DNA from: Magallana gigas
Lineage: Eukaryota
Direction of reading: 5' to 3'
DNA length: 64,000 bases
NCBI RefSeq assembly: GCF_963853765.1
Contig: NC_088854.1
Coordinates: 50,654,001 to 50,718,000 of the forward strand
Positions 12,401 through 37,921 of this stretch are shown piece after piece. The position numbers and the translations under genes are program-made. Numbering within the stretch: the stretch's first letter is position 1; each line of letters opens with the position of its first letter. The notes beneath the pieces are model-generated. The model was not told the origin of the DNA. It was given only the letters and a program-made list of their open reading frames with translations, and did not search any database.

Positions 12401-15400
12401 TCAAATTCAAGTTCAACAATATACAGGCAGAGACCAGGAGTCTTGAGGTTGTAGCAATTAATGTCTTCTTGGTCTTCGTCTTCACTTGATGTGGAAGGAA
12501 CAGTGAAACTAGCAAAGTAAAGGAAATCATTTTAAATATTTAAATCACTTTTTAACTTTCTGAAAATGCTACTATATATACACTTGTATATTGGCAAAAA
12601 TGTGTCAAATTGAGTCCCTATATTACAATATACAAATACCTTCAAGTACTTTCAGATTTTTTGATAAAGGGGTTCCACAATATATATTATCAAGAATTCA
12701 TATGAGCCTTAATTTTCAAAATATTAATTTGAAAAAAAAAATCAATTATGGTTTAAATTTATTCATTTCTGAAAAGTGCTTAATCTAATACGTAATTTTA
12801 TAAAATCATTGCTGTTTTTGAGGTCTGAATATGAAAACCCCCCCAGCAATAATTGTTTTATTAAATGATTCAGTGATATATTGATACAAACATATAAAAT
12901 CGAGTATTATCAAGCGAAAATTTTAGTTTGAAGCAATAACAAAACAAATTGCGTAACACAATCTTTTTTCAGTCCAATGTGGAGATAATCATATGTTATA
13001 TTGACCTCATAGGTCAGATGCAGATTAATGTAATGTTTTAATGTTTTATTTTTTCTAGATTGTTGGATATTAGCTAATCAGAGAGTTAAGAATTCATCAA
13101 TCATATAATAATAAAGTATATCATCTATTATATAAAGATCATGCTGTACTGTATTGAATGTTGTGCATTAAAAATCTTATAACCCTTCCACCCTATAAAC
13201 ATGTACAAATGTGGAATTTCATTAAGTCCCAATGTATAATTTTGAGAAGCCATTGTTATAATATAAATAGAATTGTGTACTATGCAAAACAATTTGAATC
13301 ACAGTTAGCATTTTCATCTATTAATATATACATGTACATGTAAATATGCATGAAAGCCATGGTGTTTTAACATACTCTGGCTCTTGGGTATCTGATGTAT
13401 TTCCTTCATCAGCTTTGGAATTTCCAGAGTGGCTTTCAGTAGCCATGTTGTTTTTCCCCTCTTCTGTACTCACAGGATGTGTCCATTTTGGCTCAATGCT
13501 AACTACTGGAGGCTCTTCGGGACACAGTTGATTGGTAAACTTCTCAACAATTTCTTTGGCTAATCTGTTAACTGTGTTAGGTGTGTGGTCTTCAAGTGAC
13601 TTCAGCATATGACAGACTTTTAGTGATATACTCTGACAACCAAGGAATTTATTGAATTCATTTTCTTTAATTTCTTCATTTTTGTTGGTATTAATTCCAA
13701 CAACCAGGATGAAATTGTGTCTTTTACTTGCAGTGTCATCATCTTCATCTAAAAGTTCTAAGAGGAGGAAGAAAATGACCATTTAGTTTAGATTAATATC
13801 AGCAGATACAATACAGCAATGTCATATTGGCTTAAAATGCTTAAGATACTGATGTTTGAAAATTTGAAAATGTTATTGGCATTTGGCAAAATGTAAAATA
13901 AACCATCCCCTGTCTAAACTAAGATAATGGTGCACATGTTGCTTCTAAAATTCTAACACACAAACCAAAAACTATAAGCTTCAAAAGTGAAGCTCCAAAA
14001 AAACTCAGGTTGACGGACTGTAGCCCTACAAAAAACTGCACAGTATATCTATTGAGCACAAAAAGTTGTGCGCTGTTTTGGATTTATCGATCTTATCAAG
14101 GAATATATTCTGTGAAAACTTCAAAACCAAAAAATTTTCTTAGAGGCATTTTACTTTAGATTGTCATTACTTAACTCGCCTCTAGATATCTATTTTGTTC
14201 AAATAACACCCTCACAAGCCTTGTAAATTGAAATGGTGTGGTTTGTTTACAGATAAAAATGGCAACTCTTGATCCCGAAGTGAATTAATCTAACATATAC
14301 TTCACTTAACAAGTTACCCAGGTCGATTAGGGTGTTTAGAAAAACGTTTGAGTAAGTAAAGTGGTGAATCGGTAGTAAATTCTCATAGGAATTTATTGAC
14401 ATGAAATTATTTTCAGAATGTATTCAAAAATTAGTTTGATAAGTCTAAATCTGTCCCCAACTTTTTGTGCACAGTATTAAATAAAAAGTTTTTTTGTACG
14501 GGTGGAACTGTAGTTCCACAGTCCATCAATCTGAATTTTCCATGAAGCTACAGTTCTGCAGTTAGAAAATATCAGATTTCCAGGAGCATGTTGAAAATTA
14601 AATTTTAAAAAATTGTTACCTTCAAGTTTGTTCGGAATCTTGTTTGATGTTTCATTCCAGAAGGTTTTCCAGTGGACATCATCGACAATTACTATAAAGG
14701 AATCTGCTTCGCCAATGTGTTTTACGATAAGTTTGCTGGTATGAGTAAGTTTATCTGAAGAAAAAAAATATTTATTGTCAATAAAAGAATTGATAGATGG
14801 AAAAAATTACCAATGCTAAAATTTTTCAAAATGTATTAGGATCATATGAATTCATATTGATAAGTATATATTTACATCTACCAAATATGATTCCCTCTAA
14901 TTCTTACGTAAACTTTAGTTCATTCATTGCTCTATAGAAACTAACAGGACTAATATCTACACGCCACGTTTATAGATCTTTCGTACAAACCTACAGGGAC
15001 TGAAACTGACAGGAAATTGACAGGGCAGGACTGAAATCTACATGCCCTATTCATCGATTGGTCAAAACTGACAGCAACCTTATCAAGAAAAATCACAGAC
15101 TGCATGAAATAATCATGATGGTGTCAGACTCAAACTCCATAAGGAGATGATTTGGCAGTTTTTTTTTAGCTATAAATGTACTAAATATGTACATTAAAAG
15201 TAACTTAGTTAATTTAACTTACTTTTTACTATCAATTTACATGTAATTGTTACTTAAAAGAAAGAAAAAAAATTACATAACACATTAACGCGGATTATGT
15301 GATTTTTTCTGCAATGTAGCCACTTTCATATATCCTGCATGAATCACCAAAGGAAGCGTTTTGTGGTTTGAATATTGACATTTAGATGAAAGGGGAAATG

Positions 15401-18362
15401 AGGGATTTACATACACGACATACACAAGTGGTACTTGCTAATTTACAATACAAGGATATTAAAGTACATTTCTCATATTTCTGTTGTATGAAATGTATGA
15501 ATTCTAATATATTGCATCCTTTATCAAAAAAACCTCAAAATGCATTACATATTGTTGAATTAAACTAGATGACATTCAATTGTCAATAAGTTGAGTTGGT
15601 TTTTAGATTGGATCAATTGGGTGCAATATGAAAAGTTTCAATGTTCTACAAGGTGTGCAGTATTGGTTGTAATTTTTCTCTATTAGCGTCTGTGCATTTA
15701 CCTGCTGTTGTGTTTTTCTCCTCAATCCCATGAGTGATAACTTTCTCCTTGCCAAGGTGTGCAACTATTTCTTCACTTAACAGAGTACAAGTTCTATTTT
15801 CTACGTATAGTAATCCTGAAATTCATTCACATTAAACTATTAAGAGATATTACAATGTATATGTATGTAGTAAGTGAATGAGGAGAATCAACATTACTAC
15901 ATGTACCATGAAAGTAATGTAGTCAATAAAGTATTAAATAAACTGGTACATGTTTGATCAAAATGTCTTACCTGTAAACATTGTTTTTTGAGGATACTGA
16001 TGATATTAATAAACACTAGAGCAATTTTAGCATAAATAGTTTTAATATTTTCTTGTCATCTATGATGCATACTTTCAGTTTCATTGTCATTAAATTAAAA
16101 AAACCCACCTAGACATATATATAGATCTATTTCTATTGATTATGTCATGACATATGATCTACATGAAATTATGCAGGCAGTACTGAACTATGATATCAAT
16201 ACACTATCAGGAAACCTTTAGTGTAAGCAGTACACAATAAATGTTATTATATTTGAACATCGACAGCTGCCTTAGGTATTGTTTAAACAATACAGGTAAT
16301 TTCATTCAATTTTCCTCACACTATCATTTTATATCTATTTTATATCTATATCAGAAAAAGTACAAGTATTAATAATACATTAAAACTAAACTGAGTCGCA
16401 AATCAATAAAACACACAATTATTACCGGTAAGTCATATGATATAGATCGAAGGAAATATTTAAAATTTAAAGTAAATATGATTGATTGGATTGAGTGTTG
16501 AGCGTAACAACTATGCGAAGAAGACTAGGATAAGCCCAAATGTCCACGGGCCGGGGCACTAAACGGAAAGAAATAAATCAAAGGAGACCTAACTAGTTCA
16601 TCAAATTAATAACTTACATAGGGTAAAAACACACATATATACAACATAACCACATGCACAGCATCATCTGCGTGAGAGCATGCGTTAATAATTAAGTAAA
16701 TTAACACATTTCATTGTACATGTATGTATTCAATGCAGTTACCAGTAAAAATTAAAAAGTATATGTTCTAGTGATATCACAATGAATGTTAACGAATCAT
16801 TTATATACACTGTACTCTACCAAAGCCTACCAACAATATCATGGATCGGAATGATCTTAATACATATCACCATTAGTTTCCATGGAATTACATAATCCTG
16901 ATTTCCAGGTATGCTTTTTATCTTATAATTTCTACGGTGCAGCAATGTTGAATTGCTCTATATATAAAAAAAAATTTCACAAAATAAATAAACATATATA
17001 ATAGCAACATTCTTATTTTAAGTATAACACATAACTGTTATTAAGGACTATGTGCGGTATTATGCATTTTTTGCCCCCCAAATTAACGTTTTTCGAAAGC
17101 TTTAAAAATAAGGTAGAAGATATTTGAAATCATATCAGAAATAAGTGTGTAAAAGGTTGTCTCCACAGTGACGTTATAATGTAGAAATGACATCATGAAG
17201 ATTGTCTTATTTTGATAAATTGATGTTTTGTAGCAAAATATGGGTGTTTTCCGAATGATTTTCGACTGGGAAACATCGAGCGCAGGCTTGCTCAAGTACC
17301 ACTTTTTAGTATGTTTTGTATATTTATATAAAGAAAACCATATCTTAAAATCGTACTTGAGCAGACCTTCGCTCTATACTTCTGAATGCAAAATATGAAT
17401 AAAAAATGACGATATTTTCATTTGTTTGCAAAAGTGCGGGAATTTGGTCATTTAAGTGACGTCATAGATATAAACAGCAACTGAGCAATGATGACTAAAA
17501 TCAAGATTAAAGTGATACTGGCATCCTCTGTACAATGATTTATGAAGATTTGATTTTTATACAACACTATTTAGAAATTGGTTAAAATTGGGGGCAGATA
17601 TTTGACCTTACCGCACATAGTCCCGCACATAGTCCTTTGTCAAACTTGTTATGCATCCTACTTAATTACTTCATGATGCACTTATATACTTATGTCATCA
17701 TAGTCAATTAATGATTATAATGCAAGTTGACATAAAATTACAGATAAATGACCAAATATTTATGATAGAAAAAGCTAACATAAAAATGTTACATATAGTA
17801 CACCATAAAAAATGATAAACATTAAAACAAATTGAATTTTGTTGCTATAACAGTATTGATATTTGTTTATCTGTTAATAATTGAATACAAAATACCTATT
17901 AATATGACCCTGCCATTAAAATGATGCTATTTAGATTATCTACATGTATATTCAAATATTTGAAATGAAAGTGAAACTTGGATTTTACTGTGCCAGGTGT
18001 AGTAAGGTGTAGATATAATGATCAGATGATCTGACGTCAGATTATAATTTTAAGCACATTTCGTTGATTAAATGAATAAAATTACTTTTCAATAAATCAA
18101 CAAAGGATATTTGTAAACAAAGGCAAAGAAATTAGATTACCAAATCAGGCTTGTGGAGACAAGCCTGATAGATAAAAGTTTCAAAATGTTGAACACTGTT
18201 AAACTTTTATTATCTATGGTACAGTACTCTTATTTTAAAGCAAAAACAAAACAAGTGATCCAGTTTCTCCATGTGTTTGTGTCAATATTTATACAAAATA
18301 TGAAAATTAGTTAAACATTGTTTAAAATAATATCATTTGACTGTTCACTTACCCACTGACAT
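9439..18362 (-). CDS. Caspase-family (peptidase C14A) protein, paralogue A, 659 aa, with atypical N-terminal domain
   Basis: Exons 18362-18353, 15815-15702, 14754-14620, 13757-13376, 12508-12252, 11994-11726, 11297-11076, 10641-10371 and 9758-9439; all GT-AG, phases consistent, 1980 nt. p20: YNLKTPGLCLYI, LVLIISTHG (catalytic His), CPALTEKPCTFFIQ|ACRS (catalytic Cys). p10: DSLVMFASAPG..GGWLI..VPCLYHRLSKDI. Confidence 0.92.
13976..14550. mobile_element. Degenerate inverted-repeat insertion in caspase A intron 3
   Basis: Absent from the matching intron of paralogue B. Degenerate terminal inverted blocks: CAGGTTGACGGACTGT / ACAGTCCATCAATCTG, GCACAAAAAGTTG / CAACTTTTTGTGC, AGCTTCA / TGAAGCT. Ends are approximate. 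Confidence 0.6.
15972..15981 (-). other. Possible alternative first coding exon of caspase A (ATG TTT ACA G)
   Basis: ATG plus strong donor CAG|GTAAGA in phase 1, in frame with exon 2, with an in-frame stop upstream; not found in paralogue B. Confidence 0.35.
17045..17635. mobile_element. Kolobok-like non-autonomous element in caspase A intron 1
   Basis: TTAA then GGACTATGTGCGGTA at the left; TACCGCACATAGTCC at the right with the terminal 12 bp tandemly duplicated; right TTAA not preserved. Confidence 0.65.
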
Positions 18363-18545
18363 CCTGGCCCATAAACTGACCTACATGCCAGACTACTTTC
18401 TGTTTCCATGAATATGTCGGGTTCGAAGAAGAGCATTCGGATTACCTCGCCTTTTCCTCTACCTGGTGTAAAAAAGCCGAGCACCGATTGGTCACACTAA
18501 ATCACGAACGAGAGCGAGAATGTCCCTAAATTATAATAAAGGGTA

Positions 18546-23800: not shown

Positions 23801-26800
23801 GATTATGAGACATGAAAGAATATCATTTATCTGATTAATTTATGATTTTATTTATCTATAATATCTCAACAAGTCTATTATTATTAACTTATCAAGAATT
23901 CCTATCATAATTAAAGAATTTACACAGCCAAATTGAAAAGGTGAACATTAATAAGTCTTCAGGGATTAATTATCCTGATTTGTGCCACAACTCTGAACTG
24001 TCAATATTTGTTGCTACGGTGCTATTAAGTGTCTCTAAGTTTAGTGAAGAATGATTTATTTACCCCACCTGGAAATTGCTTCCTTGAAATATTTCAACTT
24101 GATGTTTTCTTTAAAATAAATTGTAGTGATGGATGAATGAGATTCACATCCATAATCAAGTGATAAATATTTAAATTTTTTAAACTGGTTTAGCATTTTC
24201 ATGTGCTATCAAAAATTAATATCAATTAATAACTTGTAGGTGAAGATGACCCTGAGGCTGTCATTTCAGTTCAAGCAAATAATGAAGGAGTATTGGAGTT
24301 TCTTCTTCTGGTCACTGGTGACATGAAGCAAACATTTGCCATGTTCCCTGAGGTGCTAATGATTGACTCTACTTACTGTACAAACAGGCTGAGAATGCCA
24401 TTATTTTCCCTTCTGGTAGAAGACGGAAATGGAACTGGGCAAACTGTAGGGTATGCTTTTATCACCCATGAAACAGAACACACCCTCTCAGCTGTCATGA
24501 CAGAGACTTCAAGAATACACAAATTAGAAAAAGTAAAAGTTGTAGTATTAGACAAAGACATGAAGGAAATCGCAGCTGTAAGAAAAGTTATTCCAGGGGC
24601 AGAAATTCAACTTTGTAAATTCCATGTCATTCAAGCTGTAGATAGATTTATTCAAAAATTATCAAAACCACAAGAGGAAAAAAATGATCTTAAGAAATCT
24701 TTTCAGTCACTTGTGTTTTCGAAATCAAAATCAGCTTTTGAAAGAGCATTATGTCACCTGGCAGCAACAGCCCCTGATAGTTTCATGGCCTATCAAACAA
24801 AAACTGGGGAAAGCCACATCAGATAAAACATTGGGCATTCTATAAAACAATCCAACAAATTAATCTGGGAAACACAACAAATAGTAGGATGGAGTCACAT
24901 AACCAGAAAATCAAAGATATCCTGAAAAGAAATATGACACTAACAGAGGCAGTAAAGAGCATCTTACTACTGCACAGGGGAAAAGTAAACGAAATGACTC
25001 ACAGAGAATTCAACCATACATTTAAAACTGCATACCGCCTAGGAGATGATGATGTTGTAAAAGATGACATTGTTAAAAACATAACACCATATGCAGCAGG
25101 CATCCTAATTGCAGAACTAGAGAAAGCCCGTTTCAGCACATCAAAGAACAATAAAATGTGCAGTTGTTCTCTTAAGAAGACCATGCTTTTGCCATGTAGA
25201 CATGTTTTTGCCAGAAGGATAGAGCAGGGAGAAAATATATTCAATATTGATGATGTTGCAGAGAGGTGGCACCTATCATACCAGAAAAAAATATGGACAA
25301 GTAGGAGACACAAAAGGACAAATACAGAAACACCAGAAAGCAGTCAACATCTGCGAAAAAAATTTAAGAAAAATCCATTATCAAAAACCCAAAAATTCAA
25401 GGAAATGATGGTATTATGCAAGGCTATTGCAGATTATGCATCTACTTTGGGTACAAAAGAGTTCAATAAAAAAATGGATACTCTTGCTACGATGTATGAT
25501 GCATGGCTCAGTGGGGAAAAAGTCATTTTTAAAGCAGAAGAAGCTGATGAACCTTATCCCTGTGTGACACCAGAGACACCAATCATCTCAGCTCCATCTC
25601 CATCCAAAATTAACAACATGGTGCCCTCACCTAAAACCAGTGAAAGCGTTGAAGACTTGCCTTCTTCCCCATGTTCGTTGCCACCATTATCACCTGAACC
25701 TCCACCATTACCGTCCAAAAATAACAACATGGTGCCCTCACCTCAAACCAATGAAAGCGTTGAAGACTTGCCTTCTTCCCCATGTTCGCTGCCACCATTA
25801 TCACCTGAATCTCCACCATTACCGTCCAAAAATAACAACATGGTGCCCTCACCTCAAACCAATGAAAGCGTTGAAGACTTGCCTTCTTCCCCATGTTCGC
25901 TGCCACCATTATCACCTGAATCTTCACCATTGCTGTCCAAAAATAACAACATGGTGCCCTCACTTCAAACCAATGAAAGCGTTGAAGACTTGCCTTCTTC
26001 CCCATGTTCACTGCCTTCATTATCACCTGAATCTTCACTCAGTAATGACAACATGGTGCCTTCACCTTGTACTAGTGAATCCTTTCAAGACTGGGCTTCC
26101 TCACTAGCCTCATTACAATTTTTATCTCCAACTCCACTTCAAGACAATCCAAGAGAATTAACACCAATGCCTTCTTCTCCGTTTTCTTTTGAATCGAACA
26201 CTCCAGAAAAAAGCACAACTCCTGTGCCTTCCCCAGCAGGATTCAAAAAAGATAAATCAAGAACATCCACCTGCAGTACAGGCAGAGCAACCAAAATTCT
26301 TAAAGACTTGAAGACTATAAAGTTACCAAAAACTCCTCCAGTTAGAGGAAATGTAAGGCTTCAGAAAGGAAAAGAAAATGTTTTCCAATCAAGAAAAAGA
26401 TTGCTGGAAAAAAAACGGTTGAACAAAAAGGAAACAAATAATGAAAGCAGGCATAGTAAAACCAATACCAGTAGGAGTGATGAAATAGACATGATTGGAG
26501 ACCCTAAGGAGATGCTTACTGATGTCCACATAAATGCAGCACAAAAATTACTAACACAACAATTTCCAAAGATGCATGGACTACAGGACACCATTCTTGG
26601 AAGCAAACTGCAGTTTGCGATTGAAACTGGAGATTTCATACAAATTCTACATGATGGTGCCCTGCATTGGTTGACAATATCAAACCTGTTTTGTAATGAT
26701 AACTGTGTTGACATCTTCGACTCCCTGTATACATCAGTCTCCATGGACGTTAAAATGCAAGCTGCATGCATTATGATGATCCAAGAGCAGACCATGGGTA

Positions 26801-27191
26801 TAAATGTCATCAATTGCAAGCGACAAAAAGGAGGATATGATTGTGGATTATTTTCAATTGCATATGCAACAGATCTTTGTTTTGGAAATGACCCATCAAT
26901 GAAAACTTACACCCAGAAAAGTATGAGAAGTCATTTGCTCTCATGTTTGGCAGAAAACCAAATGTGCCCTTTTCCATCAGAAGAAAGGAATATGCAGAAA
27001 AGGGTGACAAAGTCCTTTAAGATTCCACTTTTCTGCATTTGCAGATTACCAGACAATAGGGAAGAAAAAATGGGGAAATGTGAGGAATGTAAGGAGTGGT
27101 TTCACAAGTCGTGCCTTTCAATTCCAAAGAATTTAAGGTGTTTGAAGAAGTGAATTCGAAATGGTACTGTACTAAATGTAAAAAAAAATGA
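20817..27191 (+). CDS. MULE transposase fused to SWIM, Ulp1-like (C48) protease and PHD finger; two 1-nt frameshifts
   Basis: Exons 20817-21058, 23212-23319, 23558-23793 and 24240-27191. WRKY/GCM1-type YRC..DC..HNH; DDE motifs IDSTY, LDKD, CKFH, RMESHN; SWIM CSC..PCRH; protease LHW/IFDS/Q..DCG; PHD FCIC..C..C..WFH..C..WYC..C. Frame breaks at ~24794 and ~27127. Confidence 0.9.
25612..26075 (+). repeat. 111-bp (37-aa) coding tandem repeat, 4 copies plus a partial
   Basis: AACAACATGGTGCC at 25612, 25723, 25834 and 25945; unit NNMVPSPQTNESVEDLPSSPCSLPPLSPESPPLPSKN. Confidence 0.95.
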
Positions 27192-37790: not shown

Positions 37791-37921
37791 NNNNNNNNNN
37801 NNNNNNNNNNNNNNNNNNNNNNNNNNNNNNNNNNNNNNNNNNNNNNNNNNNNNNNNNNNNNNNNNNNNNNNNNNNNNNNNNNNNNNNNNNNNNNNNNNNN
37901 NNNNNNNNNNNNNNNNNNNNN
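37791..37921. other. Assembly gap
   Basis: 131 N bases. Confidence 1.

What the first reader, a model, noticed from the sequence alone, without database searches (positions are those of the whole stretch)
13376..18362. Tandem array of caspases with a putative TIR/SEFIR-like N-terminal domain instead of CARD/DED
The first ~165 aa alternate five hydrophobic strands and helices: VGLLYV / CTLLSEEIVAHL / KVITHG / KLIVKHIGEA / DSFIVIVD / HWKTFWNE..LEELL / NFILVVGI / ..SISLKV / TVNRLAKEIVEKF. This is the flavodoxin-like TIR order, and IVKHIGEADSFIVIV resembles the TIR_2/SEFIR betaC signature. Death-fold prodomains are all-alpha, so this is not CARD or DED. A duplicated, diversifying TIR-like-caspase would be a direct sensor/adaptor-to-protease immune module, conceptually parallel to bacterial TIR-activated caspase-like defence. 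The fold assignment is inference from sequence pattern only.
Basis: inference. Interest (0 to 1): 0.8.

Follow-up and report, generated by a model that had tools for sequence, protein, structure and literature searches.

The report
Oyster caspase pair with orphan prodomain
Two neighbouring oyster genes encode cell-death proteases (caspases) whose front end is a small alpha/beta domain found only in oysters instead of the usual all-helical recruitment domain. No test could show that this domain is a TIR immune-signalling domain.

Summary
On the minus strand, nine exons (18362 down to 9439) encode a 659-aa caspase. RNA contigs and reads show the four junctions that build the N-terminal 213 residues, and a spliced transcript ORF (P0012) starts MSVGLLYVENRT. 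The "array" is a pair: a second intact copy (727 aa) lies about 13 kb to the left, and the genome holds no further copy.

The TIR/SEFIR reading is not supported:
- **Family scans:** Pfam, PADLOC, NCBIfam and PDB sequence searches give no TIR match.
- **Profile test:** a comparison with 25 oyster TIR domains scores no better than reversed or shuffled controls.
- **Weak leads:** language-model neighbours and a marginal profile match point to degenerate small-GTPase-like domains such as CENP-M.

It is therefore a non-death-fold, oyster-restricted prodomain of unresolved ancestry on a catalytically intact caspase-3/7-like enzyme. dN/dS between the copies is 0.4-0.8, so diversifying selection is not shown. 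TIR- and ROC-prodomain caspases are already reported in annelids. The scan holds no earlier report of this on other DNA.

The parts
18353..18362 (-). Copy 2, coding part of exon 1 (ATG TCA GTG G, then GTAAGT). The 5' UTR reaches at least 18387.
   Evidence: Sequence. Joint 15814|18352 in runs X12, X10 and X21. Transcript contig L011 aligns to 18387-18352.
15702..15815 (-). Copy 2 exon 2: residues 4-41 (strand 1, helix 1, strand 2 of the N-terminal domain).
   Evidence: Splice sites. Joints 15814|18352 and 14754|15702.
14620..14754 (-). Copy 2 exon 3: residues 42-86 (helix 2, strand 3 DSFIVIVD, helix 3 with FWNE).
   Evidence: Joints 14754|15702 and 13757|14620. Sequence.
13376..13757 (-). Copy 2 exon 4: residues 87-213. 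It holds the acidic loop, strand 4 NFILVVGIN, helix 4, strand 5, helix 5, then a disordered Ser/Thr/Glu-rich linker.
   Evidence: Joints 13757|14620 and 12508|13376. AlphaFold secondary structure.
12252..12508 (-). Copy 2 exon 5: end of the linker and start of the caspase large subunit.
   Evidence: Pfam Peptidase_C14 positions 3-57. Joint 12508|13376. The 3' splice site is by sequence only.
11726..11994 (-). Copy 2 exon 6: large subunit with the catalytic His (STHG) and a ~22-residue insert. It ends with the Gln (..FFIQ) of the active-site pentapeptide; the ACRS part lies in exon 7.
   Evidence: Pfam Peptidase_C14 positions 69-125, E 0.0012. Sequence. Splice sites by sequence only.
11076..11297 (-). 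Copy 2 exon 7: catalytic Cys (Q|ACRS across the junction) and the first part of a ~150-residue intersubunit linker with an ETD|S site.
   Evidence: Sequence and reading frame. Not covered by the reads laid.
10371..10641 (-). Copy 2 exon 8: rest of the intersubunit linker and start of the small subunit (..FASAPG).
   Evidence: Sequence and frame.
9439..9758 (-). Copy 2 exon 9: small subunit (GKEAYNRERQGGW..) and the stop codon.
   Evidence: Pfam Peptidase_C14 positions 171-231. phmmer to caspase-3 p12 chains, E 5e-4.
4400..4421 (-). Copy 1 coding exon 1 (MSTLRNV + G).
   Evidence: Alignment to copy 2 and the splice site.
3071..3184 (-). Copy 1 exon 2.
   Evidence: tblastn 64% identity. Gene model.
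2435..2569 (-). Copy 1 exon 3.
   Evidence: tblastn 77-81% identity. Gene model.
1693..2164 (-). Copy 1 exon 4, with a longer poly-Asp loop and a longer linker. The caspase exons of copy 1 lie left of the window (window coordinates -1521 to about -6960) and complete an intact 727-aa frame.
15971..16295 (-). Alternative non-coding 5' exon spliced to exon 2 in one RNA run. A further alternative joint lies at 16820.
   Evidence: Joints 15814|15971 (X12) and 15814|16820 (X10); record 13.

Best explanation
The locus is a tandem pair of transcribed, intact oyster genes for long-prodomain caspases of the caspase-3/7 type (659 and 727 aa).

**Architecture of each protein**
- An N-terminal globular alpha/beta domain of about 165 residues: five strand-helix units, with an Asp-rich disordered loop before strand 4.
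- A disordered acidic Ser/Thr/Pro linker of about 65 residues.
- A large subunit that keeps the catalytic His (STHG) and Cys (QACRS).
- An unusually long intersubunit linker of about 150 residues.
- A small subunit.

**The N-terminal domain.** It is detectable only in oysters and belongs to no described family. It is a generic doubly wound three-layer sandwich. Its ancestry is unresolved: the leading but unproven candidate is a degenerate small-GTPase-like (pseudo-GTPase, CENP-M/Ras-like) scaffold that has lost the P-loop. A TIR origin has no specific support.

**How it most likely works (inferred, not shown).** The domain takes the place of CARD/DED as the handle that brings the zymogen to a partner or platform, or holds it inactive. 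Activation then follows the usual caspase route: proximity-driven dimerisation and cleavage after Asp in the intersubunit linker (a conserved E-T/S-D|S-E-D site about 35 residues after the catalytic Cys) and in the acidic prodomain linker. The two paralogues differ mainly on helices 1 and 2 of the domain, which could give them different partners.
For: - **Gene model and transcription:**
- **Second intact copy, only two copies in the genome:**
- **Caspase identity:** three co-linear Peptidase_C14 matches on exons 5, 6 and 9, caspase-3/7 small-subunit matches at E 5e-4, and the STHG and QACRS motifs read directly.
- **Restricted to oysters:** an exhaustive phmmer of exon 4 against 1.84 billion representatives found only five proteins. 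Four are oyster-type exon-4 ORFs and one is a low-complexity match. Word searches found only Logan exon ORFs and one spliced ORF.
- **GTPase-like lead:**
  - All named language-model neighbours of residues 1-168 and of 1-92 are CENP-M, Ras, Arf, Gtr1/RagA, Roc, EutP, GPN or adaptin-binding clusters, best score 0.89. None is a TIR cluster.
  - hhalign against 20 intronless oyster Ras-family genes scores 17.9 over 53 co-linear columns (helix 2, strand 3, helix 3, strand 4, against Ras alpha2-beta4-alpha3-beta5). Reversed controls score 13.1-13.5, and 1 of 60 shuffles reaches it.
  - The exon-4 profile weakly matches the G4-G5 part of the TrmE G domain, E 0.41.
- **Purifying but relaxed selection on the domain:** dN/dS 0.59.
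- **Precedent:** unusual caspase prodomains in lophotrochozoans, including ROC and TIR in annelids (PMC11463336) and dsRNA-binding motifs in oysters (PMC7836458).
Against: - The structural model is of low confidence: mean pLDDT 62, four of the five models below 50, and the single-sequence run failed at pLDDT 35. Even the topology is provisional.
- No match in any search is statistically significant. Language-model scores are below the 0.9 lead threshold, with 159 shared features. The Ras hhalign P-value is 0.047.
- P-loop GTPases are not among the top 50 structural matches, and Pfam Ras and CENP-M models do not hit.
- The GTPase motifs G1 and G3 are absent, and the NKxD-like NTNKNE is not conserved in the distant exon-4 homologues P0009 and P0011.
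- The recruitment/activation role, the cleavage sites and any partner are inferences from caspase biology. Nothing here tests them.
Confidence: 0.5

Rival explanations
1. The N-terminal domain is a true, highly diverged TIR or SEFIR domain. The protein would then couple TIR-TIR recruitment (MyD88, TLR or IL-17R adaptors), or TIR NADase signalling, directly to a caspase.
For: - Five strand-helix units in the order of a TIR.
- TIR-prodomain caspases exist in an annelid (PMC11463336), and this oyster genome holds at least 73 TIR exons.
Against: - No TIR, TIR_2, SEFIR or TIR-like Pfam or PADLOC model matches at E<=10.
- The hhalign score of 13.8 is below both reversed controls, and 5 of 60 shuffles reach it.
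- TIR chains rank 34th and 40th, below many unrelated folds, and none is in the top 50 of the second-look list.
- No TIR cluster appears among the listed language-model neighbours in the three searches (top 100 hits each).
- Box 1 (F/Y-D-x-F-x-S-Y) and the box 2/BB-loop motif are absent by direct reading.
Confidence: 0.08
2. The domain is a lineage-specific regulatory or localisation module that acts only within its own protein, with no adaptor or platform. For example, it could mask the dimer interface or active site until the acidic linker is cut, or anchor the zymogen to a cell compartment.
For: - The domain is joined to the protease by a long, disordered, Asp/Glu-rich linker with several candidate Asp cleavage sites.
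- Oyster effector-type caspases with long linkers are reported to be held inactive by the linker (PMC11543851).
- The homodimer test gave no support, which is uninformative either way.
Against: - Nothing tests contact between the domain and the protease.
- The most divergent surface between the paralogues (helices 1 and 2) would fit partner specificity at least as well.
Confidence: 0.22
3. The N-terminal region has no function of its own. It would be a recently accreted, slowly decaying sequence carried along by a functional caspase-3/7-like gene.
For: - It is restricted to oysters.
- Exon 2 diverges between the paralogues as fast as the adjacent intron: 79.8% identity for both, dN/dS 0.81.
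- The fold prediction is of low confidence.
Against: - The frames are intact in both paralogues and in every exon-4 variant from other samples, including homologues at 34-54% identity.
- dN/dS is 0.43 for the exon-4 part and 0.59 overall.
- Long stretches are identical between the copies (strand 3 to helix 3, and helix 5).
- The region is spliced and transcribed.
Confidence: 0.1

Closest known systems
Lophotrochozoan caspases with non-death-fold prodomains: oyster Cg3C-like A/B with two dsRNA-binding motifs (PMC7836458); annelid TIR-, ROC-, Z-binding- and kinase-prodomain caspases and flatworm ankyrin caspases (PMC11463336)
   Same: A caspase catalytic domain preceded by a globular prodomain that is neither CARD nor DED. 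The genes are lineage-restricted and often tandemly duplicated.
   Different: The prodomain here matches no Pfam family. Its kinship to the annelid TIR or ROC prodomains could not be shown. It is seen only in oysters.
Bivalve/gastropod caspase-3/6/7 group with a long intersubunit linker (PMC11543851)
   Same: An effector-type catalytic domain (nearest solved relatives caspase-3/7) with a linker far longer than 60 residues, about 150 here.
   Different: That paper describes the linker and its phosphorylation, not an N-terminal alpha/beta domain. Whether these two genes belong to that cluster was not tested (no sequences were compared).
TIR domains (Pfam PF01582, PF13676) and SEFIR (PF08357)
   Same: Similar size, five alternating strand-helix units, and a three-layer alpha/beta sandwich.
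   Different: No profile match, no conserved boxes, and structural similarity no higher than to many unrelated folds.
CENP-M and other degenerate small-GTPase-like domains (Pfam PF11111; Ras PF00071)
   Same: Nearest language-model neighbours. Similar length. The strand 3-helix 3 and strand 4 segments resemble Ras beta4-alpha3 and beta5 (..LVGNK..). There is no P-loop, as in CENP-M.
   Different: No significant HMM match. The oyster's own CENP-M lies on another chromosome. The model has five strands rather than six. GTPases are not among the top structural matches.
Bacterial TIR-activated caspase-like defence
   Same: Conceptual only: an immune signalling module upstream of a caspase-family protease.
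   Different: There the TIR and the protease are separate proteins linked by a small molecule. Here the domain is fused to the protease and is not shown to be a TIR.

Membership tests
Caspase (Peptidase_C14, PF00656) | Sequence match to the family profile across the large and small subunits | tested here: met
   Three co-linear exon matches to profile positions 3-57, 69-125 and 171-231 (13, 19 and 15 bits; each exon alone is below the 21.4-bit cut-off). The small-subunit exon matches caspase-3/7 chains at E 5e-4. The whole spliced protein could not be scanned because it has no reference.
Caspase (Peptidase_C14, PF00656) | Catalytic His-Gly and the Q-A-C-x-G cysteine pentapeptide | tested here: met
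   Direct reading of both models gives STHG and QACRS (the last Gly is replaced by Ser). The Arg before the first helix and the Arg in the small-subunit loop align by eye with the S1-pocket arginines of caspase-3. Enzyme activity was not tested.
Death-fold prodomain (CARD / DED) | All-helical six-helix bundle with a match to CARD or DED profiles | tested here: not met
   No Pfam hit. The model has five strands alternating with helices.
TIR / TIR_2 / SEFIR | Match to the family profiles | tested here: not met
   hmmscan of P0012 residues 1-170 against Pfam-A and PADLOC at E<=10 gives no TIR-type family. hhalign against 25 oyster TIRs gives P 0.2, not above the reversed or shuffled controls.
TIR / TIR_2 / SEFIR | Flavodoxin-like fold whose closest structural neighbours are TIR domains | tested here: inconclusive
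TIR / TIR_2 / SEFIR | Conserved boxes 1-3 (box 1 on strand A, the BB-loop motif, the FW box) or a catalytic Glu in a NADase-type pocket | tested here: not met
   Direct reading: strand 1 is GLLYVEN and the loop after strand 2 is HGIEEKNTT, so there is no box 1 and no BB-loop motif. Only FWNE on helix 3 recalls a W...E element. The box definitions are from my own knowledge.
Small GTPase / P-loop G domain (Ras PF00071, CENP-M PF11111) | G1 P-loop GxxxxGK[ST], G3 DxxG and G4 NKxD motifs | tested here: not met
   The P-loop position reads VENRTCT and there is no DxxG. NTNKNE after strand 4 resembles NKxD, but it is NTNQ or NLDQ in P0009 and P0011. CENP-M itself also lacks these motifs (my own knowledge).
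Small GTPase / P-loop G domain (Ras PF00071, CENP-M PF11111) | Match to the family profiles or structures | tested here: inconclusive
   - No Pfam hit, and the PF11111 scan of the genome does not touch this locus.
- hhalign against oyster Ras gives P 0.047, above the reversed controls, and 1 of 60 shuffles reaches it.
- Language-model neighbours are all GTPase-like, at 0.76-0.89, below the 0.9 lead threshold.
- No GTPase is in the top 50 structural matches.

The most novel reading that the evidence does not exclude
The 165-residue domain is a previously undescribed, oyster-born caspase recruitment module of non-death-fold type, possibly a G domain stripped of nucleotide binding. It would define its own activation platform, and the two paralogues would read different partners through helices 1 and 2. 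That would be a new way of wiring an effector-type caspase into immune or stress signalling. A diverged TIR version of the same idea remains possible, at under 0.1.
Probability: 0.3. Interest if true: 0.6.

Novelty: new variant of a known kind. Interest (0 to 1): 0.36.

Why it matters
Bivalves have expanded and reshuffled their cell-death machinery, and most of their caspases are listed as having "no specific domain" in the prodomain (PMC7836458). This pair shows that at least some of those prodomains are folded, conserved, family-less modules rather than spacers. If the domain proves to be a recruitment handle, it gives a concrete bait for finding how oysters switch on an effector-type caspase without CARD/DED adaptors. 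As it stands, it is a modest addition to a known theme. It is not evidence for a TIR-to-caspase pathway in animals.

Tried and rejected
- **Pfam on single N-terminal exons:** nothing.
- **Word searches and the exhaustive representative search with exon 4:** these returned only unspliced exon ORFs from Logan contigs and no annotated full-length protein. The collections seem to hold prokaryote-style ORF calls for this animal. One spliced ORF, P0012, was found with copy 1's exon 4 as the query. It became the only usable reference for the domain.
- **P0012 tail:** its contig L011 is chimeric after nucleotide 644; the 3' part maps to another chromosome at 97%. Only residues 1-172 were used.
- **Alignments A2 and A3:** MAFFT misplaced the short exon fragments, so these were discarded. 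A1 was used.
- **Foldseek against PDB:** no match at E<=0.001.
- **ESM Atlas shape search:** only unnamed or Rossmann-type clusters at TM 0.46-0.55.
- **Single-sequence AlphaFold:** failed, pLDDT 35.
- **Homodimer prediction of the domain:** no answer, score 0.00, controls not run. This is not evidence either way.
- **hhalign in global mode:** uninformative.
- **PDB sequence search with P0012 and with the A1 profile:** only chance-level rows, E 0.16-1.1.
- **NCBIfam:** two chance-level rows.
- **Full spliced proteins (659 and 727 aa):** these exist only in my scripts. They were not sent to database or folding tools because they have no reference.
- **Read laying:** used once on 12460-18455, so the junctions of exons 5-9 and all of copy 1 lack read support here.

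Full report
**What is there**

The window is AT-rich animal DNA. The public runs that hold it are labelled oyster. It is G000:C2:50654001-50718000 of a 564-Mb assembly.

On the minus strand I built a nine-exon gene, copy 2: 18362-18353, 15815-15702, 14754-14620, 13757-13376, 12508-12252, 11994-11726, 11297-11076, 10641-10371 and 9758-9439. All introns have GT..AG ends. The frame is open for 659 residues.

"VGLLYV" is produced by joining the 10-base coding part of exon 1 to exon 2.

**Transcript support**

Contigs or reads of four RNA-type runs laid on 12460-18455 show the joints 15814|18352, 14754|15702, 13757|14620 and 12508|13376. Each is seen in one to four runs, and all have CT..AC ends on the plus strand. 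Two alternative 5' exons also appear (15814|15971 and 15814|16820).

Independently, a protein search returned P0012, an ORF from a 1160-base Logan contig. It begins MSVGLLYVENRT and runs colinearly through exons 1-4 at 89-98% nucleotide identity. The contig is chimeric beyond base 644, so only its first about 170 residues were used. Exons 5-9 rest on sequence alone.

**Array or pair**

A tblastn of the model against the window plus 40 kb to its left finds one more gene, copy 1. Its N-terminal exons lie at 4421-4400, 3184-3071, 2569-2435 and 2164-1693. Its caspase exons lie left of the window. It has the same orientation and an intact 727-residue frame.

Whole-genome searches with exon 4 and with residues 1-90 find these two loci only. 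The "array" is therefore a tandem pair.

Seven further exon-4 variants at 60-96% identity occur in Logan contigs of other samples. Two more distant ones, P0009 and P0011, are 34-54% identical. The module therefore varies among oysters.

The exhaustive search of 1.84 billion representatives found nothing outside these oyster-type exon ORFs, apart from one low-complexity match.

**The protease**

- Exons 5, 6 and 9 match consecutive parts of Pfam Peptidase_C14.
- The small-subunit exon matches caspase-3 and caspase-7 chains at E 5e-4.
- Both copies keep STHG and QACRS.
- Between His and Cys there is an insert of about 22 residues.
- The intersubunit linker is about 150 residues.
- An E-T/S-D|S-E-D motif sits about 35 residues after the catalytic Cys, where caspase-3 has IETD|S (the caspase-3 comparison is from my own knowledge).
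- A group of bivalve effector caspases with long linkers has been described (PMC11543851). I did not test whether these genes belong to it.

**The N-terminal domain: sequence tests**

P0012 residues 1-170 gave no TIR, TIR_2, SEFIR, CARD, DED, Ras or CENP-M match in any of these searches:
- Pfam at E<=10
- PADLOC
- NCBIfam, chance-level rows only
- PDB sequences, chance-level rows only

I then built local profiles from the oyster's own genome: 25 TLR-type TIR domains and 20 intronless Ras-family genes. I compared them by hhalign with an alignment of the domain made of copy 1, copy 2, P0012 and nine exon-4 fragments.

| Profile | Score | P | Columns | Reversed controls | Shuffles reaching the score |
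|---|---|---|---|---|---|
| TIR | 13.8 | 0.2 | 27 | 15.2, 14.5 | 5 of 60 |
| Ras | 17.9 | 0.047 | 53 co-linear | 13.5, 13.1 | 1 of 60 |

The Ras match covers helix 2, strand 3, helix 3 and strand 4, aligned with Ras alpha2-beta4-alpha3-beta5. It is marginal and not significant.

**The N-terminal domain: structure**

AlphaFold with alignment A1 gave mean pLDDT 62 and pTM 0.65. The other four models were below 50. The best model has five alternating strand-helix units and a disordered Asp-rich loop at residues 91-104. The single-sequence run failed.

- Foldseek found nothing at E<=0.001.
- TIR chains are absent from the top 50 of the second-look list.

By the tool's own calibration these values mean only "a common arrangement". 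The fold class (three-layer alpha/beta sandwich, not a death fold) is supported. A TIR assignment is not.

**Language-model neighbours (leads only)**

- Residues 1-168: nearest named clusters are CENP-M (0.89), then Ras, Arf and Gtr1/RagA.
- With those families excluded: EutP/PduV, GPN-loop and adaptin-binding clusters come next.
- Residues 1-92 alone: again Gtr1/RagA, Rho, Roc, Arf and CENP-M.
- No TIR cluster was listed in any of the three searches.

The exon-4 profile also weakly matches the G4-G5 part of TrmE, E 0.41. Together with the marginal Ras match, these weak signals agree with one another. I therefore rank a degenerate G-domain-like origin above a TIR origin.

However, the P-loop and DxxG motifs are absent. 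The NKxD-like motif is not conserved in distant homologues. The oyster's real CENP-M is elsewhere. GTPases are not among the best structural matches. I therefore do not file the domain in any family.

**Evolution of the pair**

| Region | dN/dS |
|---|---|
| N-terminal domain, whole | 0.59 |
| &nbsp;&nbsp;exon 2 part | 0.81 |
| &nbsp;&nbsp;exon 3 part | 0.67 |
| &nbsp;&nbsp;exon 4 part | 0.43 |
| Prodomain linker | 0.99 |
| Large subunit | 0.42 |
| Intersubunit linker | 0.69 |
| Small subunit | 0.55 |

Exon 2 is as diverged as intron 2 (79.8% identity each), while the other exons are more conserved than their introns. Differences cluster on helices 1 and 2. Strand 3 to helix 3 and helix 5 are identical between the copies. 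This shows relaxed constraint, not demonstrated diversifying selection.

**Mechanism**

*Shown:*
- a transcribed, duplicated caspase-3/7-like gene with an intact dyad
- a folded-looking, conserved, oyster-restricted alpha/beta prodomain
- long acidic linkers

*Inferred from general caspase biology:*
- the domain serves as the recruitment or regulatory handle in place of CARD/DED
- activation comes through proximity and Asp-directed cleavage

The homodimer prediction gave no answer and is not used.

**Comparison with the literature**

Bivalve caspase surveys list CARD, DED, DD and dsRNA-binding prodomains, and 24 caspases "without any specific domain" (PMC7836458). A lophotrochozoan survey reports TIR-domain caspases in the earthworm Metaphire vulgaris and a ROC-prodomain caspase in Owenia (PMC11463336). 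Even a true TIR-caspase would therefore not be the first in animals. I found no paper describing this oyster domain.

**Verdict**

It is a new variant of a known kind, of moderate interest.

Noticed in passing
window 24293-27153 (+): Two adjacent long ORFs. One (177 aa) matches MULE and ZSWIM1-3 RNaseH-like transposase domains (E 1e-20 to 1e-28). The other (754 aa) has a C-terminal PHD finger. This looks like a Mutator-like transposon or a domesticated transposase gene.
   Followed up: partly
window 17060-17659, inside intron 1 of copy 2: RNA-run contig depth is 10-100 times that of the caspase exons (up to about 5000), raw reads lie on both strands, and there are many loose ends. This is probably an expressed repeat or transposon fragment rather than part of the gene.
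   Followed up: no
window 15971-16295 and about 16820: Alternative 5' exons are spliced to exon 2 in single RNA runs (joints 15814|15971 and 15814|16820). These transcripts would lack the MSV start of exon 1.
   Followed up: no
copy 1, left of the window (window coordinates about -5823 to -6960; locus L006): Relative to copy 2, copy 1 carries an internal tandem duplication of about 28 residues in the intersubunit linker (the ..EDDSKEVQQLRETLKCDVFKPQ.. unit occurs twice). It has also lost the copy-2 stop codon, which adds an 18-residue C-terminal tail. Its intron between the two large-subunit exons is only 105 bases.
   Followed up: partly
locus L011 (Logan contig of run SRR5830809), bases 645-1160: The transcript contig that carries P0012 switches, within exon 4 just after a GTGAGTACAG motif, to sequence that maps at 97% to another chromosome (G000:C8:43123044-43123555). 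This is most likely an assembly chimera. A truncated prodomain-only isoform is not excluded.
   Followed up: partly
window 18314-18496 and 4395-4570 (-): The region around the first exon, and about 100 bases upstream of it, is recognisably conserved between the two paralogues, although intron 1 aligns at only about 71%. This is a candidate shared promoter / 5' UTR.
   Followed up: no
Logan proteins P0001-P0007, P0009, P0011: At least nine distinct exon-4 variants of the prodomain (34-96% identical to the window copies) occur in other samples. That is more than two loci would give in one individual, which suggests copy-number or presence/absence variation, or several oyster species.
   Followed up: no
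window 37791-37921: A run of 131 N (assembly gap or masked).
   Followed up: no
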